Positions 24,770-55,437 of a stretch of DNA of 64,000 nucleotides are shown here, piece by piece. The DNA comes from Pocillopora damicornis. Its lineage: Eukaryota. A program made the translations under genes and the position numbers. The DNA lies in contig NW_020845647.1 of the NCBI RefSeq assembly GCF_003704095.1, positions 434,001 through 498,000 on the forward strand, in the 5' to 3' direction. The notes beneath the pieces were generated by a model. The model searched no databases and had not been told where the DNA came from. It worked only from the letters and a program-made list of their open reading frames with translations. Each line of letters begins with the position of its first letter. The first letter of the stretch is position 1.

Positions 24770-25215
24770 GTGATTTCGAGTACAAATTTGTGTTAATTAG
24801 TACGGGTAAATTTTTCAAAGACAACAAAATTGCACGAGCCCGTGAGGCGAATGCAATTTGTAGTCTAAGAAAAATTTACAAATGCTTGTATACACCAAAT
24901 TGCACGAGAAATCATATAGCTACTTGTTAATAATTACAAGAAAAACACATCACAGAAAGTCTAGACGGATGAAATTTTGGCATCGTGCGCGCCATTTGTA
25001 ACTTGCACTCGTGTTGCAACTTTGCACTCATGTTTCATAAAAAATGCACTCGTTTTCAGCCAATCATGTATATTTTTAAAGCATTAATACATACGCGAGT
25101 AGATATGGAATTTCTCTCCGAGTGTTCACTCACTCGATCGCTGCGCTCAATCTTCAGAAATGTGGAGTTGCACCTTTAAAGAGAAATATCTACGAACGCC
25201 CATGTATAATTCAAT
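24770..25215. repeat. Palindromic interspersed repeat fragments
   Basis: Nested inverted repeats (GTGATTTCGAGTACAAATTTG vs CAAATTGCACGAGAAATCAT; AAATTTTTCAAAGACAACAAAATTGCA vs TGCAATTTGTAGTCTAAGAAAAATTT). Confidence 0.6.
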
Positions 25216-26149
25216 ATCAATTACATCTGGCACTGAGCGCAGCTTGACACCACAACTAGTGACGCTTAACAGAAGACCCCACTTCATTCAAAACCAATGA
25301 CTGAATTGAATATTTCAGTCATTTCGCATTGAAATCACCTAGAGCACTTTCATTCATTTGTTCATGTTTGCGTGTAAGCTATCTTCACTCTCGTCAGTTG
25401 CTAGGTGTAAGGATTGATAGGGCAAAAATATTAACGACTTCCAACAACATTGTTTCCTATCACGCAGATTATCGAATCTATAATAAAAAGCTTAAAGTAA
25501 TTAAATATCACAGTCCTAATATTTCATTGCAAGCGCTGAAAATGTCAAAGACTCTTTTTAAGATGGTAAATCGCTCATTTCATTGGTATTGTGAATGCTG
25601 TTGGTGTGGTCAAGAAACAGAAATCGGTTGAAAAGACTCGGTGTTTTTGCTTAGACTTTTAATTATCCCTAGGCCGTTTGCAAAACAAATACATCCCCTC
25701 CAGCAAAGATTATATTCAAACATTTGTAAGAAGATTTCCAAACGTAACAAAGTGCCATGATGATGATGCCTTGAGTAGGTAAGGATTCGGGATTTCATCT
25801 CGCTACTTTTCGATCGGAGAAGGTTTGGACAAGGATTTTATTAGCGTGTAGATCAAACGGTATGTAATTTACAAAGGAAAATAAGAAATTATCTGAGTTG
25901 AGGGTTCAGTTCATTAGAAACATAAACATCATTGAGAGAATAAAGCAAAGATAACGGTTTGACCGTTAAAGAGATGAAAAACGCTTCACAGCAAAAACAT
26001 ATCACTAAGCGGAGAGAATTATCCTTAAATTCACATTTGCCATGAATCATTTGACGAGGTAAAACGGAGAGTAAAAATTTTTTTACAGTGATTCAAACTG
26101 AAACAACAGTTTTAATGAAAGGATGTTGGGCGACATGCAGCCCACAATT

Positions 26150-26270
26150 TTCGGAAGCGGAAAAACTTTTTCTTTGTCTCATAAAAGTCACAACAACAAC
26201 TGCAGAAGCGATAAAGGTAATTTGAAATTCACCTATTGAAAACCACTGTTCTTCTGAGCATAAAGGGCGA
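26150..26270 (+). promoter_or_regulatory. Conserved proximal promoter of E
   Basis: Blocks CGGAAGCGGAAA, AAAAGTCACAAC, TTTGAAATTCA and GCATAAA are shared in the same order with 30388-30525. Confidence 0.7.
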
Positions 26271-26365
26271 AGTTTAATTGAGCTGTATTCTGTACTAAAC
26301 TGGATCAGTGCATCATCTCAGAGACAACCTCTGATTCGTGAACTCTAACTCAAACGATAAACGAC

Positions 26366-26482
26366 ATGAATTCAAAAATGGCTGTCTTGATTTTAGTCAT
26401 TATATCAGCTGCCTTTTTATGCCAGAAAAGTGATGCTTTCGCCGCTGGCTTAGGGAACATGAAAAAAAGAGAATCGAGGGAG
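26366..26482 (+). CDS. Secreted peptide precursor E, first coding exon (second exon unresolved)
   Basis: MNSKMAVLILVIISAAFLCQKSDA/FAAGLGNM-KKR-ESRE, then a perfect donor GAG|GTAAGT, phase 0. Upstream region is homologous to that of F. No private Cys exon was found. Options are the shared exon at 33976-34125 or a short exon at 27158-27178 (VFLDEF*). Confidence 0.85.
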
Positions 26483-27782
26483 GTAAGTAACCTTCCTCTA
26501 GAGTTCAAGATGCTTGTAAAAGCTGTTTAACCAAGCACCATGTATTGAACGGCATTTCGTATAGTTGTAGAAAAATCCGGTACAGTCAATTTTACAGTTT
26601 TGTCTTTCAATTTTCAAGACCTTCATTGCATGAGGTCCAGGCTGAATTGTACTTGGTGATTTGCATGGCAATTGAATTTAAATAAACCTCCGATATCATG
26701 AAGAACGGCTTTTAAGCCTGAATCGTTTAAAAACACTTTAATGAAATATTTAACGAATATAAAAAGTATAACCGATCTGTACTTCTCTCCCTCTGAAGTA
26801 GATATAAGCTGTATCTCTAGGATTAAAAGTGATCTACTGCTTAAGTACAAACAGCTATGACAATCGTCTTTTAATGACTGGTAGCCGCACCCACGCTGAA
26901 AGTTAAGGAAAATACTCCGACGAGCTAAATCATCTTAAGTTTTAACACGAGTTTAACAAGACATTACATGGAATATAATTTATTTATCGAAATTAAATAT
27001 TTTCTTTATTTCTCGTTTGGCTCGAGATTCAAATCGGAATCGCAAGGTAATGGTCATATAAATCTGAGAACTATAATATCACTGCTAAACCATTTTCTTT
27101 GTTTACTTTGCTTGTAGCCATATTTCTGCGGAATTCACTTTCTCTTCCATTTTTCAGGTTTTTTTAGATGAATTTTAAGTCCCAAAAATGTCATAAATCA
27201 TGGTTTAAGTTGAGAACATTACTCGAAGCAGATAAAAATATTCAGTATAAACTTACTACACTCGAAAATGAACATTAAACAGAAGACCTATTCAAAGGAA
27301 CAAATCTGGTGTTTAGGAGCGCATGAAAAACCATGTAAGATTCGGTTATGCACGGCAAGAGCTGGGGAGAGAGAGAGAAAGAGAGAAGAGAAAGGTACCT
27401 CTTCAAGATATATGAGCCAGCGATGCTATAAAGGTTGCTAAGCTATAGCTAAGAGTCTTGACTTATCACTGATTCTGACACTGGTCTCACTTCTTATTTT
27501 GAATGCTGCTTTATCAATTTCGTATTGAAAGGGCGAGAACAAAACCCAGCTCTAGATAAAGAATAAAATTATCTTTAAAAAAAAGTTCCAATAAAAAAAA
27601 TGTAGATTTTCACGGGTAGGCGTCAAAGAAATTCAAAGTTAATCTTCCTTGAAATCAAAACAAAGTTTGTCTAGGATTTCATTTTGCTTTTGATTGAATG
27701 TATTCAAAGAAAAGGTGCTTTCTCTTCCTTAGAAACTTTTTGCATTCATTTGAAATATAATAAGAACAAAGAGCAAAAGTGA

Positions 27783-27998
27783 GAGGGTTTCAGTGGGGTT
27801 AACCGCTGGCCGTATAACAGCGACACAATTTATCAGCCGTTAGGAGTAAAAATTGACAAAATTTAACCGTAAGTCATAAAACAAATTAATTGTTACAATT
27901 TTTCTGGTGACAACAATGGAGAGATATTAAGCGTTAACAGTAAAGTGGCCAAAAGTTTAACCGTTAGCCGAAAAAGCCATCACCCCATTGAGACCCTT
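27783..27998. mobile_element. MITE with GAGGGT-type TIRs and 6-bp TSD AAGTGA
   Basis: Left GAGGGTTTCAGTGGGGT, right ACCCCATTGAGACCCTT, AAGTGA on both flanks. Internal AACCGT(T/A)A repeats. Confidence 0.8.
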
Positions 27999-30387
27999 AA
28001 GTGAAGATGTCACATACTGTCTGATCAAAGCGGCACCCAGTCCCCCCATTTCAACTTGACACGTCTAAAAAATTTTCAAAATCAAAGATCTCCAAAAGAG
28101 ATTTGACTTCAAACTGTGAGAGACTAGATTTGCGCGGGTATATTTTACTAACGAAGAGAGAACCCTTTGTATTCGTAATCAAAAGAAAAAATACTTGGTT
28201 TTTATGTTTATTGCCGAATTCCATACTTTTGAAAGACATGGCATGCTGCGGGAAAAAAGTAAAGTTAAACATAACATGTCCTTCTTAGGCAGAGAACTCA
28301 AAATGATAAATTATAAGTATGAGCCGCCATTTAGAAAACGTTTTATCCTCAAGGTGGGAAAAATGGGAAATAGTCCTTAGACTTAACAATATACATAGTT
28401 TTGAGAATTTAATGGCGAAAAAAACCTGTATATGTAGTTACACATTGATAAGACATATAACGGGTAGCTGATGTACAGCCATTATCATTGTATTGTGTAG
28501 ATACCCGAGTAAATTCCAAAACCCTGCCCGGGAAAATATGAAAATATCTTATGGACAAAAAGATATTTAAACTTAATTTAAGCTATGAAAATGAGAGAGG
28601 TTCTTTTGCTTCTAACCAGTTAAGAGCAATTTTAGCCTTTAATTATACAAAAGTGGAAAAAAGGATGTCAAATCGTAAAGGAAGAAAATGATGATTTTAC
28701 AGCAATATCACATCATTAAAATGTTAGTAGCTGCTTCTAACACTCCTACGATTCACTTATTTGATTGAAATACACCTCTCACTTTTCTAAAGATTCATAT
28801 GGTGGGCGAAAATGCGCGGGCACTCTGGAACTTCTTAGCCTTGTTGAGTGATTTTTACGAAAGTTCTTGAACTAGATCACCCTGGGGAAAATGAGGAAAT
28901 ACTCACCTAGTCTAGTCGATACTCTGCAAGGCATTTTGATTTTCATTAGCATGTCGGCTCGCCTTGCACGCAATGTGGCCTTGTATCAAAAATATGCTGA
29001 ATCATTTCCTAAAAGGCAACAGCATAATAGCAACCACAGGGAAACAAAGGAAAGAGAGTCCCTTTGGAAAAAACTCTTTCCGTGATACTTGCCGCATACT
29101 TACCCTGTGTGGTAGATATACCAGAACTGCCACCTGATATCGAGGAAGCTGTTTTGACTTTTCGTTATCAGTTCATACGGTAAATTTGCTACCACCAACA
29201 GTACGTTGTCTGCCTAAAGAGATGTCAGTTCTTCCATTACTGCACTTTCCAGCACTTTTTGACCAATAACTCAAACAAGCCAGCTCTAACTCATTGATTT
29301 ATAAATTGTGAATCAATGGAATGAAATCTAATCTGTGATAAACTATTAGCCAAAAAAGAATGCACGAGTAATGGTATCTACTCGATTTAAAACTGTCAAT
29401 GTAATTATAATTATAGCTTACATTTACTGCAACTCCAAAACCCTTTTCCACAGCAAGAAATTAACATTTCAGAGCATCATCTGACGCAAACATCACAATT
29501 TAATTGTGATTTAAATAGACCTCTCTTCATGCTGATTTTCAAACAACACAAGCTAATTACGAGCGTAGTTTCGCGGCGGGATCATTTGTCTTGATCCGTT
29601 CAATTATTTCAAAGTTTTCTAAACAGATTCATTACCGCCACACAAGCAGTCATTCACTTTGCAAAGCAGGTGTTCCTGTTTACATTATTATTTCGTTCAT
29701 TACAGCTACAGATATTTCTTACCACATACTCGGGTGATGCAGTAAGTTGAACGGTCAAAATGATTTTTGAAGATGAAAACTTTCCTTAGTTTATGTGAAG
29801 TTAATAGAAAACGATAAGATGGCAGTTTGCGTTTAAATCTCCAAGATCAGTGGGCAACCTGCAGGATGTATAATTTTGAGGATGAGACAAATAAAATTGA
29901 AGACCCAATTTCTTTTTTCGGCAGACCACGAGATACAATAATACAAGTGAGAATGTGGGAAAAGTGAAATATATTTTCCCGGGGGGCTTCTAGATGATGT
30001 GACGGGATTGTTCGTTCAAAATTTTTGAATGTAATTTTTAATTGACATCAATCTTAGGGTCAAGCTGTCTTTGACCCCTACTCTACTGACTATCTGACGG
30101 CTCAATTTTTATGATGTCGCAGTCTTTAATGTTACTTAGTATGAATTCTTTGTCATAGACTTCTATCTAAACAGTATAACGAGGCATGCTTGTCACCCTA
30201 AAAGACGCAGTGATAGCTCATAATATAAACGAAACTAGCGCAAAGCTAACATCGGTGATTTGCACTTAGCTTTTAAGCGACCTACACAACTAATATCCAG
30301 GTCATTGTTGTGACATATCCCCAGGGAATGGCACAACTGGAACAAAAGTGGCCTTTAATGGCGTTGACGCGCTGACTTCCCATAGGA

Positions 30388-30525
30388 CACGGAAGCGGAA
30401 AGTTTATTTTCGTCAGACAAAAGTCACAACAGCAGTTGTGATAGCTATTAAGCAGATTTGAAATTCATCGATTAAAAAACACCGTTTTTAAAGGACTTCC
30501 CACACACGACGAAGCATAAAAGGCG
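30388..30525 (+). promoter_or_regulatory. Conserved proximal promoter of F
   Basis: Homologous to 26150-26270. CATAAAA TATA-like box at 30515. Confidence 0.7.
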
Positions 30526-30619
30526 ACATTTAAGTACAAAGTGGTTCACATTATTCTGATTTGTGCACCCAAGTCAGTAAACCTGCACTGTGAATCTAGA
30601 AACATACGACATAACCAAC

Positions 30620-33600
30620 ATGAATTCAGGAGTTCCCATTCTTCTTGTGGTCTTCGTTTTAGTGGCCGTTTTTTGTCACAAGTGTGACGCTTTTACGGCA
30701 GGAGCAGGAATTTTCAACAAAGGCAGGGACAAGGGAACAATAAGTGAGGTACATAAATGTACAGTTTAGAAAAGCTGATGTAAATGACAATAATTAATGC
30801 TTTTGTCGCTTTTAGTTGGAAGTCTGCTTTGAGCATTGGATCCTTCTTAGATTTAAACGTTTTTCACCTATAAGGTTGAGGAATTCGACTGTTGAGTCAG
30901 TATCGTTTTAAGCAGAATAATGATATTAAAATGTTTGTCACAGAGCTATGCCAAAAGGAATTGCTCGTTTTGCTAATGGCCGCGCCCATTCTTATGTTAG
31001 AAGTTAGCAGGAATAATATGAATTTAAATATTCAAAGATGTTTTCAATCTGTCCTTTAGCCCTGGAGTATGGTTTGAATGGAAAAATAACAAGTCCCGAT
31101 TATGATTCACTTTAAACACCGTTACATTTTTTCAATAATTAGAAATACATTGAACCCTGACCGTTAAACATGCGACGATTGCAAGTAATGATTAGAAATA
31201 AGTTTTACGAAGCATCTCCGTCGAGCCCAAACTGACTGAGACAGTTGATACAACCTACGATTGAACTGAAAACGAAACCTTATATTTTTTGACATCATAT
31301 AAGAAAGAGATTATTCAGTCATCAAAACTATTATTTAAAATTAAAGGGAAGATTCCCACTAAGTTTACTCACAAATTGACTTCAAGTTTAACGCTCCATA
31401 AACAAGGCAATTGAGACTCGATCTCGAAAGCCCTCCTTGAATAGAAAGAATGGGTGTTCAGATCTGTGATACTTTTGTAGCCCCCTTCAGAACCTAAGGA
31501 GCATTATTCGGTTGGATGGAGTTTGGTTAAGCTGAAGCAAACATTACATTTCTGAACCTCTTGAAAACTTTTCAAAAACCCTTTCAGTACAGGAAGTTAT
31601 TACATTTAGTACTTTATCACCATCGAACTCTTCTTTTTATCGTTTACATCACCTTTATAAGGTTGAATAGTGCATTTCTCCAAGCCTACAATATTAAATT
31701 TGATCTTGGAGATCTCAAAAAAAAAACGAAAACCAAAAACATTGACAATTCTCGTCAACAATTCTCTGAGTTGGCACAAAAATGATAAATTGGTATCATT
31801 CAACCAATTTTTTTTTACTTTTTTTTAAAGGAAGAACAACCTAATCACTTGCGTTGTTTCTTTTTAAAATGCAAACATCATATTTACAAGTACAATGTAT
31901 TTATATTTCGGTGTCTCTAAACTTTTTCAAGCAGTAATCAATTTAGTGATTTTAGGCAAAACAGTAGACGTGATTGGGCTTTTGCTGAAATATAAAATCT
32001 ATGAAAGAATAGTTGATAGAAATCCACACAGTATGGAACAATTCAAACTGTCTGTTTTTTCACATTTTGTTTATCTAAACATAAGGAAATGTTGCTCATT
32101 TTACAATAACATAAATATTTAAACATTGAAGATGATGAAACATGTGTTTTCCTAATTCCAAGTAATTAGAAGTTAAATCTGGGTGCTATTGGTGGAGCGG
32201 AGACCAGAATCCGGACGTTAAAAATACTTTTCTTCCATCATTTCCTTGATGTGTATTTCGCCGACGCATTCCTTTCTTAAAGAGACTGTCAGCAAAGCCT
32301 GAGGCTTCTTCTTATTGCAATTGAATTCGTGCAAAGAAGCAATAATTCTCAGATTTGATGGATAAGTTATCTGACAAATCACAACTTCAATATGACGGAT
32401 ATTCCTAAGATTATTCCCTTGCACGACAATTTCCATATGAAGCAGGTGAATCTGAAAAAACTCATTGTCACAGCCAAGTAGTGGGAATAAGAAAATAATT
32501 TTTCCTTCTTCTTGAGTCAGATTATTGTCACAAAGAACTATATTGCACGCATCACTTTTCTCCGGACATACTTTGAAATGATTAAAAAATAAAGTAGTCA
32601 ATTTTATCTCGTTTGTGGCTTAAGGTTTTTCGGCAATCCAATCCTTAAAAACTATTTTGTAACATTTTTTGATAGACATTACATAGACCTAAAATAACTG
32701 CTAATAAGGTTGAAAAACGCGACTCCTGAAAGTCACAGCTTAAGGTCACTGCACGGAAAAGATCAGGCATTAATTCAGGTGTATACTTGTTATTCTTCTG
32801 TTTTTGAGTTCTTTACTTTTCATCATGACACTGATATCGCATCAAATCAAACACTGAACAAACAATTTGTGAAACTGACAGTAACACATATATTTCAGAA
32901 TTAGTTCTAAGAAAGTTAGATTTTTACTTTCTCTACTGGTCTGTTTTATTCACCCTTGGGTAACTGACTTGAAGCGCGTTTGTCAAGAACGATAACAGAT
33001 GTTGCAAAAACAAATTTGAATATAGAAAAAGTTTAGTGGCTTTAACGATAATTTTTTCAAATGCAAGTGGTGAGGGAGGAAGGTCAACCAAGTACGTAAT
33101 TGGTCATAAACTGAGATATTTCTCTCTCAGCAGGAGAACATGATTTATGTTCCCTCAAGAGGATTTAGAGACATGAATCATGAACATGATATGTACTTGA
33201 AACCGTATTTATTTCCTCCATAACAGCTTTCCTTCTGTGACATTACTCTACAACAGATATCTACTTTTTTGGTTCGGCAAAAAAAAAACAGTCATTATCG
33301 GCAAAAGTATGGATTTAAGTTAAAAATATGCATCAGTATTCAGGCAGGAACTGGGGTAATTTTGATTGCTTTAATGCATTCTTTCGGCAACTTGAGTCAG
33401 GCTAGTTATTCAACATTTGAGAGCAAAAAATTTCAGTCCTCTCATTACGAGCAGAGATCAAGTGACTCAGTATTACATGAGTGCCATATGACAATAAGAA
33501 TTTCCCATTGGCCATTGTTTTGATCTATGGACAGCTATCTCTTCAATCCAAAAAGAATTGTAACGAAAAATTGTTTCAGGAAAAAAAAACCAACTCATAA

Positions 33601-34125
33601 AATTAGTCTAATCGATCCACAAATCAATTTCTTTACTATGAAACGTTCTGCACTTGGTTGTATTCGGGTGTAATGGTTCCCATCTTCCCAAGAGGCAAAG
33701 AAATTGGATATTTTTTATATGGGAATCGTTGGGACTAGTTGTGAGGTCAGTCCATTGGACAAAACCCCCTGGCACTTTTTCAGACCTCCCCAACAGTTTG
33801 CACGCGATCCGTGGTACATCTTGGGTGGAGAGGGAAACCTTTCCATTTTTTATGTGAACTGCCGGCCGCGTTTCCCACCCTCTAATATCAGTTTAATGTA
33901 AGCTTGTATAAGTGATAGGGAAAAGTAACAGGGTCATTGGATTGTTCATGTAGTGGTTTTTTGTTATAATTTCAGTCCACCTGGCATCTAAAGCAGCTAA
34001 AGTACATCTGTGAAGCTGCCAAGGTGAGCTGTTCTGAGGTAAACGTGAGAAAGACTACAGAGACCAGGAGTGAGACGAAGGGAGGTGTACCAGACCATGG
34101 CGGACAGGGGATTGGAGACCAGTGA
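30620..34125 (+). CDS. Secreted peptide precursor F (exons 30620-30748, 33976-34125; 92 aa)
   Basis: MNSGVPILLVVFVLVAVFCHKCDA/FTAGAGIFNKG-R-DKGTISE|STWHLKQLKYICEAAKVSCSEVNVRKTTETRSETKGGVPDHGGQGIGDQ*. Donor GAG|GTACAT, phase 0 (a competing A|GTGAGG lies 5 nt upstream). Acceptor AATTTCAG. AATAAA at 34236 and 34271. Exon 2 C-x6-C matches that of H. Confidence 0.8.
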
Positions 34126-34589
34126 CGCAATGGTTTAGGAACTTAACGAACCACTCACTCTCAATTGAAGTGAATATGATCTTCTGAGATCTAGTGGAAC
34201 ATTGAGAGTAACAACATTAAAAGTACGATATGTACAATAAATATGGATAGTAGGTGTAATTTGAGGAGTAAATAAAGCGATTTATGAGCAAGAAATATTT
34301 CATTTATTCTGAGTTAAAGACATTAATTAATGGGGCGCACACGGTTTACGTGACTCCTTGAACAAGAAAAGGTACCAGAAGAATGATAGACAAAAGTATC
34401 AATAGGCGATTTGCTTAGGGTTAGTTAAAACAGAAGTCGCGATCTGTGAAAAAATATCATGGGCCAATTTTTGTGACAAGCAAAAGAAAAATCAAGAAGC
34501 GTGAAAAGAAGCGAAGAAGATCACGTGTGTACACAAACATTTGTATAATGACGTGTGCAACTATGACAACTGTAATCCCTCTGGCTTGC

Positions 34590-34822
34590 CGCCTGGTTGT
34601 TCGAAGGCCGATTAACGCTGAATCATTTAATCCAAGTTTCTATATTTCTCTGTTCAAAAGACGATTAGGGATAATTTTCTATATTCTTTTAAGAGCATCT
34701 AATTATCAAATTGTAGACAAAACAAATTTATACTGAGATTTCTTTTAAAAGCTTTCAGATCTGCAGTACAATTTTACACTAAGCCTGGGTTATCTTAAAC
34801 CTACTTTGAAAAACCTGGCTGG
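34590..34822. mobile_element. MITE-like element
   Basis: Imperfect inverted ends GCCTGGTTGTTCGAAG and CTTTGAAAAACCTGGC. Confidence 0.5.
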
Positions 34823-35599
34823 CTGCTGGTTTTGCTTTATTGTCAGAATTAGGATATTAGTTAATGAAACGTAAGTGGATTAGTTCATTTCATTCAAAAG
34901 GGAGAACAAGCCAAATTCTGGAAGCTTTAGTGAAACACAGTCGATGCCCGTAAGAAATGATCAATCTGTGGTTACGAGTTATTTTACGTGTAATCTAAGG
35001 AAAGTGTTGAGTGCAAACAAAACTCGAAATTGTACCTGGGTTAAGCTTGGGTGTGGACCCTGGTGTGCCTGTGATCGCCACCCCCTCCACCCACTGAGGG
35101 ATGATTTTTTTGTTTTTTCTGTAGATACGAGCCCACTGATATACGCGCGTAATGATTCGTGTTATTATATCGCTTGTAGCAATACGATGCGAAACCGGTA
35201 AGATGGGCCCATACCACCCGCTCGGGATTGCCTGCTTTGATTCCGCGCCAGAAAAAAATTGAGTCAGTACCAAGTTCGTAATTCGTGGACAATGTCGGTG
35301 ATGGAGACACACGAAGTGGCGGAAGACAATCAAAGTAAACAAAACATAAACGATTCCTATAACTTTATTTTGCTACAAACACAGTTGGCTTTCTTCCACG
35401 GCTGTCGAAGTAAACAAGCCATTCTTAATTCTTATTAAAGCGAAATCTTTTTGCCATACAATAAATCCTTAATTACCAAGCTTGTTCAATCAAGATGTCA
35501 GGACATTGGCTGGACATTGTCTCTGTCGTGAAGCATGACTTCCGCTGTGGAAGCCTTTGTTTTTATAGTGGATATTTAGATCGACGCCAGTATCTGAGT

Positions 35600-41845: not shown

Positions 41846-44800
41846 TTAGCATTGTTCGATTTGCAGAAAATCGCACTTCATGGTGTTATGCTGATCAATT
41901 ATCGGTGGAATCGACTCGGAACATAATAGCTCATTCTTGGTTTGTTTTACAGTAATCTAGACTTTTAAGAAAGCTCATTGAAGTGATATTTTTAAAGTCG
42001 CTCCATGTCGCTTTTTTCAAAGAGGACTTATTTTCAATCAGAGTGGTAAGGTCTAATTCGATATCGCCGCCAAGAACTGATTTCTACGAATTTTTAATCG
42101 AAAGTTTGTCCGGTCTTTGTCGATATTTGGGTGTTCCGCTGCCCAGATATGAGTCATGAAAGACTTTTTCAATTCTTTTGACGAACATGAGCACGATTTT
42201 TAAATTCAGGTGGGTGAATTTGAGTGATTTCCATCGTAATATTCTGTTTACATTCCCTTCAACATCCACCCTTGAATCCGAAAGAAGAACATTATAACTT
42301 GCGGAATATTTATTCTGCCCTGCCCATTAATGTTTTCCTTTGCTTCTTTTGTCACAAAAAGAATATCCGGTTCCAATCATATCTATCAATAATCCTCCTC
42401 AGACAGACCAAATAATGTCTGCGGTGCACTTTATATCTTGCTGAAGCTCATTACGTAATCCCCTGAAGCGAATATTTAACGTATAGACGCACTACCCTGT
42501 TAGAAATGAATCTCCGTATGTCACTGCCCGGTTTCTCTGATCATCGTTGAGAATAACCTCGCGTTCCCAAATGTTCCGCTCCTCTTATCCCTTGCGAGCG
42601 GGAAACGAGGACCAAATTAAATCGTGCAGTATGTGTCCCATTCTTCCCCACTATCTACTTATTTTGACCTTTTATGATGAAACTAGAGATTATTTCGCAA
42701 TAAAAGAGAAAAAAAACGTAGCAAGAATAATAAAACATAACTCTTCGCTAAGATACATATGTTGTCTGTGATCTGCTGCATTCTCAATTGGTATGGAATA
42801 AAATTGAATAAAACATGAACATCCAAATACGGCAGAGATGAAAGCAGAGAAACTGCGTTGCCGCTGGCTAAAAAAATAACCGTCGCTCTCTAGTAGAGTT
42901 GAATAACGAAATACTATGTCAGAGGCTCAAGCGCACGAGGCTTAAAATTCAGGGAAATTTGAGAAAAACAAATGGGCTGGCATTTAAAACCAAGGCATAT
43001 CGTTGTCGATGAAGGCAATTTCCTATTTGTAGTATTTCTAGGAAGAAAATTAATGTTTGAAAATATTTAGACGATTCGTAAAATCTGCTTGAATTCAAAA
43101 CCGCAAAATGTCCATGCAATATATGAACGAATTATGTAATATAGAAAAAAACTAGTAAAGTAAGAACTGACTTAAAATCATAACATGAATATCTGTTGAT
43201 TGTTATGGGCACTACTGCCATGGATGACTAGTGAAGGGATGTTTCATATGAGTACCACTACGTTAAGATATGGAGGGAAATCTGACTCACATACGGGGTC
43301 ATTCATTAGAATTGGAATAAGAAATTTCTTTGGTGTTTTCATTTAACAGGACATTTCGTCTTTTGTCTCTTTTCGCGGATTGAGGAAAAATCCGCAAAAG
43401 TTTGTTATGTCAAAAATTCTCATGCCATAATGAATAGCCACTGATTGTACGAAGCCAATGACATAAGATATCAGCCAAGAATACACTTTATAAGTGCGTT
43501 TTATTACAACATTTTAATAGCCAGTGAAGCAATCGAGTCTGTCTCGAGTTCCTAAAATTCAATGTGCTAACACGAGTTCACCTTTGGATTCATTTCTAGC
43601 AGATCTATGTAAAGTTCCTCTTTTTCGACGCGCAGTAAGCTTCTACTGCCCTGCAAAACTCGATTTCTTCTGAAGATAGGGCAAGATTCTGAAATGAAAT
43701 TTAAATCCGTTTAGAGCAAGAAACTTAAAATTTATCGAAAAATTCTAAGAACAGTCCTCAGGACTGTTAATAATCTTCACTGCAATTTACGTCTGAGTTT
43801 ATCTCGATGAATAACAATCATAACAATCTGACATCCAACATCTAATGGACAGCTTTAAGAATAGTAATCAGACCAGATTTATAAATAATCCATGAAAGGG
43901 GAACTGGAAAAATGGCTTCTAAGTAAATCAAGAATCTTTGGTTTGTATAATTGGACGAAGACACTTCACAGATGGAATTACTCTTTGTTCAGGGAGTTTT
44001 TATAAAGTGAGCATATTCCTAAAAAAAAACTGTCCAGTAAATTTTGCAAACTGCGTCAACTAAGTAAGCTTAGAATTAAAAAAAAAAAAAATGTACAATT
44101 ATCCCATCAACCCACTCATTAGGAAAGCTCGGGCTCCATTGATTTTCTGAAACCACGCAGGGCCTACGTTACACTTTGCCTAAGTAACCAGCGTTATGAT
44201 TGTATAACGTTCTATCACGTTGCATGAAAATGATTTTATTTATATTTTGCGTCCATTGTCTTTGAAGGGAACTAGTAATTTATGTATTGACGAAACTTCT
44301 CACACTCCCTAACTGAATGGAAATGTTCACGAAAAAACAGCTCGATGGATAAACATCTGCCAAGCGATCGAAAAGAGTCTAAAGAGAGATTGAAACAGTT
44401 CCCCGCTATACTAATTTGCTTTCTTGTGCTTTGGCACCAACTTAGTTGTTTCTTTCAAGAATCTAATGAACAAAATTTGAATCTAACCAAAGCAAAAATT
44501 TCAAAAAATCTTTTTATCAACCACTCTTGTATGAAATCTGTAGAAAAAACATGAGTTTAGTTGGTAAAGCAGGTTGGCTGCGAAATCAGAAAATGATTCT
44601 GTGGTTGGAGTTTTAACGAAGGGCTCAGATGTTTTCAACGAACAACTAAGAAATATTTTTCTTTTTGTTCTGCTCTTGTGTCAAATTTTTAACAATTTTC
44701 TTTCTTTCGTTCTTTAACGTATCGTGTTGTTAATATCAAGTGGTTACGAAAACCGCAAACCTCCGCTGTTCTTTGAACTGTGGTGACTGAGAAGGTCGCG

Positions 44801-51117: not shown

Positions 51118-51240
51118 ATGTGTCCAAGACTCACTGTCGTGTTTTTGCTCGTTCTTGTTGCCGTCTCCATGTTCCCACAGACGTACGCCTTCACTGCTGG
51201 AGCAGGGAATATTGGTAAACGAGGCGAGAATTATTTCCAG
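51118..51240 (+). CDS. Secreted peptide precursor G, first coding exon (predicted FTAGAGNI-amide)
   Basis: MCPRLTVVFLLVLVAVSMFPQTYA/FTAGAGNI-GKR-GENYFQ, then CAG|GTAAAT, phase 0. No private Cys exon found between 51241 and 54000; may splice to 55330. Confidence 0.88.
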
Positions 51241-54069
51241 GTAAATTAAACCACTTAAGATATTTCTTTTCTGGCACCTACCACGTTTTCTTCTTCTTGA
51301 AAATAATTATTTTATCACACATAACACTTTATCATCTTCATCTGACTTACGGCAGGCTCACTCGATCAAACATTTAAGCGAAATAACTGATAACGTATGG
51401 TCACAATTTAACCCTGATCATTAATAGACAAATATCTCCGACAGTCAGGCAGCTAACTTTCACCGTTTAGATTGTCCAAGGCATTACAAATTAACAAAAA
51501 TCCCAGGCCAATTTTTTTTCAGTACTCAAGAGACCTACATGAGGCAAATGTTTATGATCGTCACTTATTTTCTCTGAGTCACATCTGTGATAGACAAATA
51601 ATTTTCATTTCACATATTTGCCATTGTTTTATGTATTTTTAAAAAAATTCTAATTTTCCGCTTAGTGCTTTTTCACAAATTAAATGTTTAATCCTTTTTA
51701 AGTTACATCAGTAAGCTAATATATGTTAACCAACAGACTGCCAATATTAGCCAATCACATCGCCATGTGCTCTTTTCAATTGAGACATAAAGTTAAAATT
51801 CCATAGTCATAAAGCGAGCGAAATGCTTCGAGCCATCCATTTCTGACTTCGCTTTCAGAGATAAAAGAAAGAATTCTCATTTTTTTAGTTTTGTCTTTTA
51901 TCAAAGAACGAAGAAATTAGAGCCACGACAAATTGACGTTTCAAACATCTCCCCTGTATTGTTTCATTAAATAAGTAAATTTGATTACTATTTCCTTCCA
52001 TACGTGTCGGTCAGTTTGGCTGACTGAAAATTATACAATTTGCCCCTAACGAGATAAACCATCTGGAAAACTCGCTGGTCGTTGAGACCACGGTAACATT
52101 CATTAACTTGCTCTGTTTCCAGTGAACGGATAAATTACTGAAACTAGCTTTCACTGATGTCAAAATTTAATTGTCACAAAGAAGTGTTAAAAAAGATTGC
52201 TTGATATGGTAATGAAAGTCATACATACGTAAACCGCCGCCTTCTTCGTGTGCAGGAAATGCATCATGCTCTAAGCAATAACTCAGTATTGAACATCGGT
52301 GACGGAAAGCGGAAAGTCACAAGATATCTAACCATTCAACCAAATTTTGGCTATTAAAGCAATACTCAATTAGCTGATTGATAAGTTGTTGATGAATTTT
52401 ACATGCCTCCGTCTTATTCTTCTGCTGACAGCTAGGCAGTTTTGCTTACTCTCCAAGAGGAAACTGGGCACGAGCTTGCGTTACCAAGATTTCTTAACCA
52501 GAACTATATTAGGAAGTGTATTTGTATGGGAAGGGTTCCATCGAAAAATAGCAAGAAAACAAAATCGTAATTAACCCTGTCGGTTTTTTTACTTTCTTTA
52601 AGAAAATCTTGGCCGCTACCGTTATTTGCATTTTTGGAAATGGAAAAGAGGTCGATTTAAGGGCGAATAATTTCAAAAATTGAAAGAGCGTCTCAGAGGT
52701 TGTAGCATCGTATGAAATTCGGTGCTTCATGGGATAAAACTCACTGAGATATTCACCATTGCATACGGCCAATTTCGTGGCTGGCAAAAGCGCTAGTGAG
52801 CCCTTACATTCTTTGTAAAATTTTTGATTTTTAATATCGTGTGTTTCCGAGAATTTTACCACTATCGGGCTAAATCTTTGAGAGAAAGATAGGGTACGAC
52901 CTATATTTCGATAACTCAGCACCAAAATGTTTTCAGTTTCCTGTAACCAATAATTAGTTCGTCAGTTTTTCGATTCGAACAACATCAGCCTCAGGCGTCA
53001 AAAGTCATTAAAGTCTCTGCATTTGTCTTGAACGAAGTTGTTGTCGACAAATCATGATATTTCAGCAATAAAAAATATTTGAAAGCTGAAAAATACGCCC
53101 GGAAAAACCATCGGCATCGTCTTTAAAAGAAAAGTGTTAATTCGCAAAAAAAATTAGCTCATTTTTCTGGTGTAACAGATGTTTTTTAAGATTTGTTTAT
53201 TCAAATAAAATGTTCGTTTTGTATCTAAATTGATCAAATTCATATCTCAATTTGTGATAAGTTGAAAACTGAAAAGTTTTGAATTAAATAATGTCACTAG
53301 TGATGTCTAAGCGATGCGTGGGGGACATTTATCACAACCTTGAGAGCAGAAAACGTAAGCAATATTACAATATGTTAACAGTAATTGACGAAAACACGTT
53401 GACTTAATTAATATTTAGACGTATTGAAAATTTAGAGTTACATCTGAAGAATTTCTCTTCAAAGAAAATGTGGCAGAGATTTATTAAGGAAGTCATACAT
53501 ACTTTTCACATATTGGAAATCTGTTTTGAAAAGTTTTCTAAGACGTTAGCTGAAATACTTCCCCATAAAATTCACACACTAGAAAGAATGCTCCCTGTCT
53601 AAAAACAGATAATTCTATTTGGTGTATTTACAAACGTTTACAATTAAATTACTGCTGATATTGTCACGATTCCTTATTCAATTAAACAAAATTATACAAA
53701 CGGCTCTGGAAATAAGTGAATTAACAGCGCATATCTACTTTACGTGGGATAATTTACAGATGGGTTGCATATTTTGTTAGTTGAATTCACTTCCTTTTTC
53801 CTTTTCTTTCTGTTGCTTAAAGAAGAAAACAGGATCATTTTATCGAGACTGGGGACAATAATAATCTCGTCAAATGTCGGTTATGTTTAATTACCGGTTT
53901 TAATGTGTTATCATTTAGCGTCACTTACTTTCGCCCGCGCGTTACTATCGGCCGGAAAAATACTAATCACCAAATATTTAAAAGCGGTATGACTAAGAGA
54001 GAACCTCAAAGTAGAATTGGATTAAGATACGACAACTCTGTTCTCACTACACCAGCTTTTCAGTCGAAA

Positions 54070-55437
54070 ATGATCTCAAAAGTGCGCGTTTTTTTCTTGC
54101 TGGTTCTAATTGCCGTATCTATGTATCCTCGAACGCTCGCATTCACAGCCGGAGCGGGCAATATCCGGGGTAAACGAGGTGCCAATAACATTCAGGTAAA
54201 ATGTTCCCAGTATTTCCCTTCAGCATGCCAACCTTCTTTATCCACTAGGTCACTTAGCCTCATCACGCTGAAGATGTATCGATGTGCAAACTTTTAATTG
54301 TTCGTGGTTTTGACACTACGCTCAGCAAAAGTGAGATTCGCACTTTTCCTATTAAAAAGTCCGAAAAACTTTCTTTTTCAATCATTATTATATTTTTAGA
54401 TTTATTTTGAATTTAATTACTGTGTGGAAAATATCTATTTTTTTTTTTCGGCTACAATGAAATTGAATTATTTCGCTGATCTCTAGCGATTCCGATGCTC
54501 AATTGCAACTTTTGAGTACAGGTTATCAAAATATTACAATCCACAGAATAGCCGGTTTTGAGTTGAATTTGATGCAGATATTCAGTGTCGGAGCAGTCCA
54601 CAGATGTACTTTAAAATAATTTCCCATGAGAATAAACATTTCTTTGTCTAATTTTGAGCATGCGGTTAAAACATCTTCTCATTCCTTTAGCGGGAAATGT
54701 CCCTTTCCCGACCCCTTAATCATAAATTGAGCATGTTATAGACTTCATGATAGATGTCGTATTTTGAAATATTTCTCGATATATCTACATGAAGTTGACA
54801 TTAAATTTAGATGCACTTATGTCTATCAGCACTGCAGGCGAATTCGATAACATCTTAAACACATTTTATCGCAATTATGAGAAACAGTACTTTCACCATT
54901 TGTATTTGTCTTTCTTCTGTTTGAAGTTGAACGAACCGACGGATAAATACTGACCGGGTACAACTGATTTAAGGTACTCGAGTCCTACAGCCAATGACAT
55001 TACGTAAGAAACTAACCTATCAGTTTTCACGATATTAAACTTACAACGCTCGACTGAGAAATTAACAGCACTTCACTTGACTCCAATCATTACTTTTAAT
55101 CAGGCTGTCGAAACGTCAGTCACTTTTATGTCGACAGTTCCTCCTGGACGAGCGGACCACTCAACCAACTACAACTCCTTGGTTAAAATGTTTATTGAAC
55201 CATTCTAATTCAAAACAATTTACCATTATTATCAACTTTTCAGTGTAGATGATAACTTCCGCTCAGAAGCTTCAAAACATTTACTAAGTATTCGCTGCGG
55301 TTCAAGTTCAATTATTTCATTTTTCACAGGCTACCTATCACCTCCGCCGAGTTTGCGCGACAGCGCAGTCCGCCTGCCAATCCTTGAGAAAAAAAGATAC
55401 AGCTTTTCACCAGATGGACCAGTCTAACGAACAGTAG
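54070..55437 (+). CDS. Secreted peptide precursor H (exons 54070-54195, 55330-55437; 77 aa; predicted FTAGAGNIR-amide)
   Basis: MISKVRVFFLLVLIAVSMYPRTLA/FTAGAGNIR-GKR-GANNIQ|ATYHLRRVCATAQSACQSLRKKDTAFHQMDQSNEQ*. Donor CAG|GTAAAA, strong acceptor TTTCATTTTTCACAG. TATTTAAA at 53975 and AATAAA at 55608. Confidence 0.88.

What the first reader, a model, noticed from the sequence alone, without database searches (positions are those of the whole stretch)
26366..34125. Two promoters/first exons (E, F) with only one Cys exon: variable-exon/constant-exon architecture?
E and F each have their own conserved promoter, signal peptide, mature peptide and phase-0 donor. Reading acceptors between 26483 and 30300, I found no C-x5/6-C exon for E. 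Splicing E across F to 33976 is in frame. This would let promoter choice select the peptide while the C-terminal domain is shared, analogous to clustered protocadherin or UGT1A loci.
Basis: partly seen in the sequence, partly recalled or inferred. Interest (0 to 1): 0.75.

Follow-up and report, generated by a model that had tools for sequence, protein, structure and literature searches.

The report
Two-promoter coral peptide gene
A small, unannotated coral gene for secreted, hormone-like peptides has two alternative first exons, each with its own promoter and peptide, and RNA shows that both are spliced to one shared last exon, a real example of a well-known type of gene layout.

Summary
E (CDS 26366-26482) and F (CDS 30620-30748) are diverged paralogous first exons. 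Each has a homologous upstream block, a signal peptide, an N-terminal Phe peptide (F-x-A-G-x-G...) and a phase-0 GT donor. Only one Cys exon exists (33976-34125, C-x6-C) and it is single-copy in the 234-Mb genome. No family-like Cys exon lies between E and F. In public RNA contigs, an E contig runs from 26482 straight into 27 letters identical to 33976-34002, a string unique in the genome. F contigs do the same from 30748 in 3 of 4 runs. No joint to 27158 or any other private exon was seen. E was found in 2 of 4 runs, at lower contig depth than F.

The genome is Pocillopora damicornis by the name NCBI gives a neighbouring gene. Neither form of the E/F product is in the protein libraries searched. 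At least ten such first exons exist. Four have a private Cys exon. G/H (already noted by this scan on this window) and a pair on another contig repeat the 2:1 layout, by sequence only. This is an alternative-first-exon gene. The protocadherin analogy fits the wiring only. The peptide function is inferred.

The parts
26096..26254 (+). E promoter-proximal block, homologous to the block in front of F
   Evidence: blastn 26096-26481 against 30335-30736. Core 26152-26253 is 73.5% identical to 30390-30489. Motifs are unique to E and F. Alignment A1.
26255..26482 (+). E first exon. The 5' UTR starts at or before 26255. The CDS is 26366-26482: a 24-aa signal peptide, then FAAGLGNM, KKR and a spacer, ending in a phase-0 donor.
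   Evidence: RNA contigs lie on 26259-26482 (X7, depth 59.6) and 26255-26482 (X15, depth 5.69). Sequence. The left end is only the end of the contigs, not a mapped start.
26483..33975 (+). Intron removed from E transcripts (7,493 nt). It contains the F promoter and F first exon.
   Evidence: The X7 contig passes from 26482 directly into the first 27 letters of 33976... The 27-mer is unique in the genome.
30335..30499 (+). F promoter-proximal block
   Evidence: Homology to the E block. The F RNA contig begins at 30500.
30500..30748 (+). F first exon. The CDS is 30620-30748: a 24-aa signal peptide, then FTAGAGIFNK, G-R and a spacer, ending in a phase-0 donor.
   Evidence: X1 contig on 30500-30748 (depth 678), X15 on 30632-30748 (depth 110), X7 on 30578-30732 (depth 473). 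Sequence.
30749..33975 (+). Intron removed from F transcripts (3,227 nt)
   Evidence: Loose ends behind 30748 in X1, X2 and X15 (206-255 letters) begin with the first 30 letters of 33976.. (one differing letter in X15).
33976..34265 (+). Shared last exon. The CDS is 33976-34125 (49 aa plus stop). The C-x6-C loop is at 34009-34032 and an RK site follows it. The 3' UTR has AATAAA at 34236-34241 and 34271-34276.
   Evidence: Translation. Acceptor context. Single copy in the genome. The right end is inferred from 290 letters of the X15 contig lying beyond the F donor; only the first 30 of them were shown.
51118..51240 (+). G first exon (family member, distal exon of the sibling 2:1 locus)
   Evidence: Sequence. 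Profile hit E 6.8e-25. No RNA test was done here.
54070..54195 (+). H first exon (proximal exon of the sibling locus)
   Evidence: (68% identical to G).
55330..55437 (+). Cys exon downstream of G and H (C-x6-C), single copy in the genome
44881..45012 (-). I first exon (family member that has its own Cys exon)
   Evidence: Profile hit E 0.0022. ORF and phase-0 donor.
43605..43688 (-). Private Cys exon of I (C-x6-C)
   Evidence: Acceptor scan. Profile hit E 7.5e-9.

Best explanation
E, F and the exon at 33976 form one transcription unit with two promoters. Shown: transcripts that carry E exon 1 and transcripts that carry F exon 1 are both joined to the same last exon. E transcripts skip F exon 1, which has no acceptor in use. 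Both joins keep the reading frame (phase 0 to phase 0), which would give precursors of 88 and 92 residues. Inferred: each first exon has its own start site just downstream of a conserved block of about 100 bp. The products are secreted prepropeptides. After signal-peptide removal each exposes a different N-terminal Phe peptide, FAAGLGNM from E and FTAGAGIFNK-amide from F, released at basic sites. The shared exon supplies the same disulfide-looped (C-x6-C) C-terminal peptide, ending at an RK site. Use of one promoter or the other would therefore change the first peptide and keep the second. The layout most likely arose by duplication of a two-exon family gene. Either only the promoter and exon 1 were copied, or the upstream copy later lost its last exon. 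Family members I, J, K and one on contig C3284 still have one first exon and one Cys exon each.
For:: X7 (oligo-dT RNA-seq) has a 251-nt contig of depth 59.6 on 26259-26482, followed by 27 letters identical to 33976-34002. X15 has an E contig on 26255-26482. F loose ends behind 30748 in X1, X2 and X15 begin with the same letters. No joint from 26482 was listed within 26483-32199; the 27-mer has 1 match in the 234-Mb genome with up to 2 mismatches, and the control has 0; the Cys exon is single-copy; there is no family-like Cys exon between E and F; homology covers the promoter and exon 1 and stops at the donor; the E open frame is intact (53 of 54 residues identical) in ORF calls from two other assemblies; seven first exons in 63 kb share the signal peptide followed by F-x-A-G-x-G, and I, J and K have private C-x6-C exons. 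NCBI annotates K (LOC113674054) as exactly this two-exon product, and Stylophora pistillata has an orthologue.
Against: The E junction rests on one contig in 1 of 4 runs, and its 27 letters fall below the tool's 31-letter rule for bridging. E contigs were absent from X1 and X2. E contig depth was about 8-fold (X7) and 19-fold (X15) below F, and contig depth is a poor measure of expression. Contigs cannot show transcription starts, so the existence of two separate promoters is inferred from homology and from where contigs begin. E lacks the glycine that F, G, H, I, J and K have before the basic site, so its peptide may be unamidated or decaying. No peptide, cell type or receptor is known. Signal-peptide cleavage was judged from the alignment, not by a prediction program. 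No E/F product was found in any protein library searched.
Confidence: 0.8

Rival explanations
1. E is a decaying duplicate. Its promoter still fires, and because its own last exon is gone the transcripts simply find the next usable acceptor, which is F's last exon. On this view the E form is a tolerated by-product with no role of its own.
For: E contigs appeared in only 2 of 4 runs, at lower depth than F. E lacks the amidation glycine kept by the six other clustered members. E and F share only 42% of residues. There is no annotated or assembled E product in the libraries.
Against: The frame is open and in phase with the shared exon. The upstream block is better conserved (73.5%) than the unit as a whole (60%). 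The E frame is intact in two other assemblies, and the three amino-acid differences seen all lie in the signal peptide. Contig depth in X7 is about 60. The same layout recurs at G/H and probably on contig C192.
Confidence: 0.25
2. E mainly uses a private downstream exon, such as the reader's 27158-27178 or the short C-x6-C frame at 28950, and the join to 33976 is a rare side product.
For: Contigs drop rare or low-depth variants, and 100 pieces and 30 loose ends were not shown. Frames with two Cys exist at 27229-27298 (C-x7-C) and at 28950 (C-x6-C then stop).
Against: No joint from 26482 to any place within 26483-32199 was listed in 4 runs. The only low-depth contigs over 27083-27356 and 28763-29004 are unspliced. 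Those acceptors have weak pyrimidine tracts (5-12 of 20), and the frames score nothing against the family profile.
Confidence: 0.05
3. The E-to-33976 contig is an assembly chimera, or comes from DNA that lacks the interval, and is not a spliced RNA.
For: It is a single contig with only 27 letters beyond the junction. The tool notes that DNA can be present in RNA libraries, and table 5b (the joined form in DNA runs) was not given.
Against: The break falls exactly after the last exon base before gtaagt and resumes exactly after ttataatttcag. The contig's depth (59.6) is tenfold that of the surrounding intron-like contigs (2-6). F joins the same acceptor in three other runs. As recalled, a 31-word graph needs reads that span the junction in order to build such a path.
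Confidence: 0.03

Closest known systems
Variable-first-exon / constant-exon loci (clustered protocadherins, UGT1A); recalled, not tested here
   Same: Each variable first exon sits behind its own promoter, which carries a conserved element. It has a donor but no acceptor. It is spliced in cis, across any downstream variable exons, to the first constant exon. The variable exon encodes the N-terminal part of a secreted or membrane product, including its signal peptide.
   Different: There are only two variable exons, and one constant exon that is also the last. The variable part is a signal peptide plus a peptide of 8-10 residues, not a whole domain. Nothing is known about how a promoter is chosen. 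With two exons this is simply an alternative-promoter / alternative-first-exon gene, a very common class.
Single-copy hexacoral neuropeptide preprohormones with the peptide directly after the signal sequence, including the N-phenyllactyl peptides of sea anemones (Koch & Grimmelikhuijzen 2020, PMC7523074, sections 7 and 9 read)
   Same: There is one short peptide placed immediately after the signal sequence. It has an N-terminal Phe, which in sea anemones is the precursor of the L-3-phenyllactyl cap. It is followed by Gly and basic residues, except in E.
   Different: The anemone peptides are 3-4 residues long (LRN, YRI, FKA) and unrelated in sequence. That paper states that no such peptides were found in Scleractinia.
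LOC113674054 of Pocillopora damicornis (gene K, 9 kb upstream of the window) and SpisGene18771 of Stylophora pistillata
   Same: They belong to the same family and have the same two-exon build: signal peptide, then FTAG(S/A)GGY.. and GKR, joined to a C-x6-C exon. Both are annotated from this genome and from a sister genus.
   Different: They have one first exon per Cys exon. Both are named only 'uncharacterized' or 'hypothetical'.
Neuropeptide genes diversified by alternative splicing (calcitonin/CGRP, Lymnaea FMRFamide gene); recalled, not tested here
   Same: One gene yields precursors that share one peptide-coding part and differ in another.
   Different: In those genes the shared part is at the 5' end (signal peptide) and the choice is among downstream exons from a single promoter. 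Here the geometry is mirrored and the choice is made at transcription initiation.

Membership tests
Alternative-first-exon (variable/constant) transcription unit | Two or more first exons are spliced to the same downstream acceptor | tested here: met
   E: the X7 contig runs from 26482 into 27 letters of 33976... F: X1, X2 and X15 run from 30748 into the same letters. The 27-mer is unique in the genome.
Alternative-first-exon (variable/constant) transcription unit | The downstream first exon is skipped in transcripts from the upstream one (mutually exclusive first exons) | tested here: met
   The E contig goes directly to the shared exon. No joint from E into 30500-30748 was listed. This rests on one contig.
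Alternative-first-exon (variable/constant) transcription unit | Each first exon has its own promoter and start site | tested here: inconclusive
   Homologous upstream blocks. Contigs begin at 26255/26259 and at 30500, which are equivalent places in the alignment. Contigs cannot show a start.
Alternative-first-exon (variable/constant) transcription unit | The reading frame is kept in every combination | tested here: met
   Both donors and the acceptor are phase 0.
Protocadherin/UGT1A-type variable-exon array | A large tandem array of variable exons, with regulated or stochastic choice of one promoter | tested here: not met
   Two first exons per constant exon here and at G/H. The array criterion is not met. 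Promoter choice cannot be tested with these tools.
Cnidarian single-copy neuropeptide preprohormone (peptide directly after the signal sequence) | A signal peptide immediately followed by the peptide, with an N-terminal Phe | tested here: inconclusive
   Alignment A2 has an invariant Phe after a hydrophobic stretch, with Ala or Ser at -1 and a small residue at -3 in 7 of 7 members. The cleavage site was judged by eye against the recalled -3/-1 rule; no predictor was run.
Cnidarian single-copy neuropeptide preprohormone (peptide directly after the signal sequence) | Gly plus basic residues after the peptide (amidation and cleavage signal) | tested here: met
   Present in F, G, H, I, J and K (6 of 7). 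E has KKR without Gly.
Cnidarian single-copy neuropeptide preprohormone (peptide directly after the signal sequence) | The mature peptide is detected, and expression is in neurons | not testable with these tools
   No peptidomic or cell-level data could be reached.
Sea-anemone phenyllactyl peptide families (LRN-, YRI-, FKA-amide) | Sequence of the short peptide | tested here: not met
   The peptides here are 8-10 residues of the form F-x-A-G-x-G..., against 3-4 residues in PMC7523074 section 7. This is not a member of those families. The resemblance is in precursor design only.
Any Pfam family | A match above the curated cut-off | tested here: not met
   Six exons were scanned one by one. 0 were above the cut-off. 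The best was E 0.033, 15 bits against a cut-off of 30.

The most novel reading that the evidence does not exclude
The F-x-A-G-x-G genes are an undescribed stony-coral neuropeptide family, possibly the scleractinian counterpart of the N-phenyllactyl peptides reported as not found there. In this family the two-promoter layout has been fixed repeatedly. E/F is shown by RNA. G/H and a pair on contig C192 are seen by sequence only, which makes 3 of 7 loci examined. The layout would let different cells or stages pair a different amidated N-terminal peptide with one constant cyclic peptide, as a small combinatorial peptide code set at transcription initiation.
Probability: 0.2. Interest if true: 0.65.

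Novelty: new member of a known kind. Interest (0 to 1): 0.42.

Why it matters
The gene gives abundant contigs in poly-A and oligo-dT coral RNA (F contig depths 110-678 in four runs), yet neither product is in the protein libraries searched. Small-peptide genes of this kind are therefore being missed in coral annotation. The family places a Phe-initiated, mostly amidated peptide directly after the signal peptide. That is the design behind sea-anemone phenyllactyl neuropeptides, which a dedicated survey could not find in stony corals. The family offers concrete candidates for coral peptidomics and receptor work. The two-promoter wiring is not new in principle. It is a clean, compact case in which the alternative first exon swaps a whole signal peptide and bioactive-type peptide, and it seems to recur within one small family. 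That makes it a usable model for how partial gene duplication creates alternative promoters.

Tried and rejected
I rejected all of them. No joint from 26482 to any of them was listed, low-depth contigs cross two of them unspliced, and none scores against the family profile.

Relic of a duplicated intron or last exon downstream of E. A lenient blastn of 25000-30300 against 30301-35500 found nothing beyond the donor better than E 0.23. At 60% identity a neutral relic would no longer be visible, so this does not decide between partial duplication and later loss.

Annotated or assembled spliced products. The E read-through frame found only two 54-aa ORF calls (2 of 2 candidates). The Cys-exon frame had no candidate in the 28-89 aa range. 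A full HMMER search with the 49-aa Cys exon against 1.84 billion representatives gave 0 hits at E <= 0.001. The profile of seven first exons gave 12 proteins among 938 candidates, none of them an E/F product. Length limits apply: a 92-aa F product was outside the range.

Pfam gave nothing above cut-off. A scan of metagenome contigs with the Cys exon matched 581 pattern stretches, and none was confirmed.

In one search my E and F tblastn queries were one base out of frame and are void. Only the Cys-exon query and the ATG listing of that call are usable, and the frames were corrected from then on. The regular expression found nothing and was uninformative.

Supplements that may hold related precursors (Additional files 7-10 of PMC7523074, Supplementary file 2 of PMC11087051) are closed and were not seen.


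Full report
WHAT IS THERE. The window has about 36% G+C and no N. It is contig C2282:434001-498000 of a 234.35-Mb assembly. A neighbouring gene translated from this contig is identical, over its first exon, to NCBI's 'uncharacterized protein LOC113674054 isoform X2 [Pocillopora damicornis]', whose contig length (1,027,489) equals that of C2282. I therefore take the genome to be Pocillopora damicornis, a stony coral. The RNA runs that hold the stretch are labelled coral or marine metagenome.

THE OBSERVATION. E has its ATG at 26366 and 39 codons to 26482, followed by gtaagt. F has its ATG at 30620 and 43 codons to 30748, followed by gtacat. Both donors are phase 0. Each exon encodes a hydrophobic leader of 24 residues. 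Then comes Phe and a short peptide, FAAGLGNM-KKR in E and FTAGAGIFNK-G-R in F, and a few spacer residues.
- The two units are homologous from about 270 nt upstream of the ATG to the donor (26096-26481 against 30335-30736, 60% over 412 columns, E 5e-19).
- The best-kept part lies upstream of the transcripts (26152-26253 against 30390-30489, 73.5% over 102 nt; alignment A1).
- Two motifs from that block occur only at E and F in the window.
- Homology stops at the donor.
- The exon at 33976 follows ttataatttcag and reads 49 codons to a stop ending at 34125, with a C-x6-C loop.
- That exon is single-copy in the genome.

Between E and F I read all 240 AG dinucleotides in phase 0. Nine rows (four distinct frames) contain C-x4-8-C, none of them family-like. 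A profile of five family Cys exons finds only three Cys exons in the window and none in the E-F interval.

THE TEST. The locus (7,760 nt) is longer than the 6,000 letters allowed for read laying, so I laid 26200-32199. That stretch holds E, every possible private exon up to F, and F itself. Joins to the Cys exon then appear as loose ends whose letters are printed. Four runs from four studies were used (X1, X2, X7, X15), all Logan contigs.

Results for E:
- In X7 (oligo-dT RNA-seq) a 251-nt contig of depth 59.6 lies on 26259-26482 and continues with 27 letters.
- Those letters are identical to 33976-34002, and the 27-mer has one match in the whole genome with up to two mismatches allowed.
- In X15 a 231-nt contig (depth 5.69) lies on 26255-26482, with only 3 letters beyond.
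- X1 and X2 show no E contig.

Results for F:
- Loose ends behind 30748 in X1, X2 and X15 (206-255 letters) begin with the first 30 letters of the same exon, with one differing letter in X15.
- In X7 the listed F contig (30578-30732) stops before the donor.

No joint from 26482 to 27158 or to any place inside 26483-32199 was listed. No joint leads from E into F's exon.

Limits:
- The E junction rests on one contig in one of four runs.
- Its 27 letters are fewer than the 31 the tool asks for a bridging record. As I recall, an overhang of under 31 letters is what a 31-word assembly graph leaves where two paths merge, which fits two first exons feeding one exon.
- 30 loose ends and 100 pieces were not shown.
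- Contigs show presence, not absence, and they show neither starts nor expression levels.
- The join falls exactly at the donor and the acceptor, so I regard it as a true splice.

WHAT IT IS. E and F are alternative first exons of one gene, and both products keep the frame.
- The E read-through frame finds only two ORF calls from other assemblies, each 53 of 54 residues identical.
- The Cys exon finds nothing by word search and nothing in 1.84 billion representatives.
- Pfam gives nothing.
The gene product therefore seems absent from these protein sets, although the F contigs have depths of 110-678.

THE FAMILY. A profile of E, F, G and H, run over 124 kb around the window, finds three more first exons: I (window 45012-44881, minus strand), and J and K (2.8 and 8.9 kb upstream of the window, minus strand). 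All seven share Met, a hydrophobic leader, Ala or Ser at -1, and then an invariant F-x-A-G-x-G (alignment A2). Six of the seven have Gly plus basic residues after 8-10 residues; E does not.

I, J and K each have a private C-x6-C exon 0.85-1.3 kb downstream, behind a good acceptor. For K this two-exon product is what NCBI annotates, and Stylophora pistillata has an orthologue of 79 aa.

Genome-wide, the profile gives 14 matches at E <= 1 among 19 candidates. Seven are the clustered members, all within 63 kb. Of three further hits that I fetched:
- The one on C3284 has its own Cys exon.
- The two on C192 lie 5.9 kb apart on one strand, with a single family-like Cys exon behind the second and none between them. 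358 AG sites were scanned there, with one unrelated hit.

Of the ten first exons examined, four are 1:1 with a Cys exon. Six form three 2:1 loci (E/F, G/H and the C192 pair). Only E/F is backed by RNA here.

By eye in alignment A2, E, F and J share the MNS start and a Cys-x-x-x-x-Ala end of the leader, while G and H share another leader. G and H are 68% identical and E and F 42%. This suggests that the E/F and G/H pairs arose separately.

HOW IT PROBABLY WORKS.
Shown: there are two classes of transcript, they share an acceptor, F's exon is skipped in the E transcript, and the frames are open.
Inferred:
- Transcription starts just downstream of each conserved block. Contigs begin at 26255/26259 and at 30500, which are equivalent places in A1.
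- Transcripts from the E promoter run through F's promoter and exon, which has a donor but no used acceptor. The E donor therefore pairs with the first strong acceptor, 7.5 kb away.
- After signal-peptide removal the N-terminal Phe peptide is released at the basic site and amidated where Gly is present. The shared exon gives a disulfide-looped peptide ending before RK.

The closest described design is the hexacoral single-copy preprohormone, in which the peptide sits directly after the signal sequence. In that design an N-terminal Phe becomes the L-3-phenyllactyl cap of sea-anemone neuropeptides. The same paper says such peptides were not found in Scleractinia (PMC7523074: abstract and sections 7 and 9 read in full, plus passages). 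The peptides here differ in length and sequence, so this is a resemblance of design, not membership. In PMC11087051 I saw only the search listing and passages. These describe dibasic and some monobasic cleavage and amidation in Nematostella, and nothing on this family.

IS IT KNOWN?
- Full-text searches for the six-residue motif found 0 papers.
- Searches for coral + neuropeptide + 'alternative first exon' found 0.
- Searches for the gene identifiers of K and its Stylophora orthologue found 0.
- Two broader searches found no description of the family.
- Sequences hidden in supplements could not be seen.
The wiring itself, alternative promoters with alternative first exons joined to common downstream exons, is a standard metazoan arrangement. 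With two first exons, the protocadherin/UGT1A comparison is an analogy of topology only. Earlier notes of this scan report other alternative first-exon and last-exon layouts elsewhere in this genome, and the same layout at G/H on this window.

VERDICT. This is a real, unannotated gene whose architecture is a new member of a known kind, inside a probably undescribed coral peptide family. Interest is moderate. Its value lies in the peptide family and in the recurrence of the layout more than in the layout itself.

Noticed in passing
window 51118-54198: A Pocillopora meandrina gene model (P0003, 98 aa, 'unnamed protein product, partial') joins the first 32 residues of G's exon to a frame that starts about 66 nt upstream of H's ATG. 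It uses an internal GT in G's exon and then reads through H's exon. This gives G a possible alternative route that differs from the shared-last-exon reading. It may also be a prediction artefact, since it puts a second signal peptide inside the protein.
   Followed up: partly
G000:C192:87375-94900 (loci L015, L016), minus strand: Two further F-T-A-G-I-G first exons lie 5.9 kb apart. One family-like C-x6-C exon sits behind the second and none lies between them. This is a possible third two-first-exon, one-last-exon locus. The evidence is sequence only.
   Followed up: partly
window 28245-29103: In run X2, two low-depth joints (28245 to 28907 and 29007 to 29103) have CT..AC ends, which is GT..AG on the minus strand. 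This hints at a spliced antisense transcript inside E's long intron. Only one contig supports each joint, with 30 letters on the short side, so the evidence is weak.
   Followed up: no
window 27785-28005: A short element with inverted ends, judged by eye to look like a MITE. RNA contig depth there is 92-1352, against 0-6 around it, with many different loose ends. This marks a dispersed, transcribed repeat family.
   Followed up: no
window 60911-63571 (+): An uninterrupted 886-aa open frame. By eye it has the look of a class C receptor, with a Venus-flytrap-like N-terminal half, a Cys-rich linker and seven hydrophobic segments. It lies 5.5 kb from the G/H gene. No family scan was run.
   Followed up: no
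They have different N-terminal peptides and a C-x5-C last exon, one first exon per last exon. The whole 64 kb is a cluster of small secreted-peptide genes.
   Followed up: partly
window 52296-52330: Between G and H there is a stretch that resembles, by eye, the GGAA-rich and 'gtcacaa' motifs of the E/F upstream block, followed by a short ATG-led hydrophobic frame. It may be a relic of another first exon. It was not found by the motif searches at 1 mismatch or fewer.
   Followed up: no
window 26335, 26378: Both E contigs (X7 and X15) differ from the window at the same two places. The second difference changes codon 5 of the signal peptide (Met to Val). This points to a different strain or species in those runs, with the rest of E's exon unchanged.
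   Followed up: no
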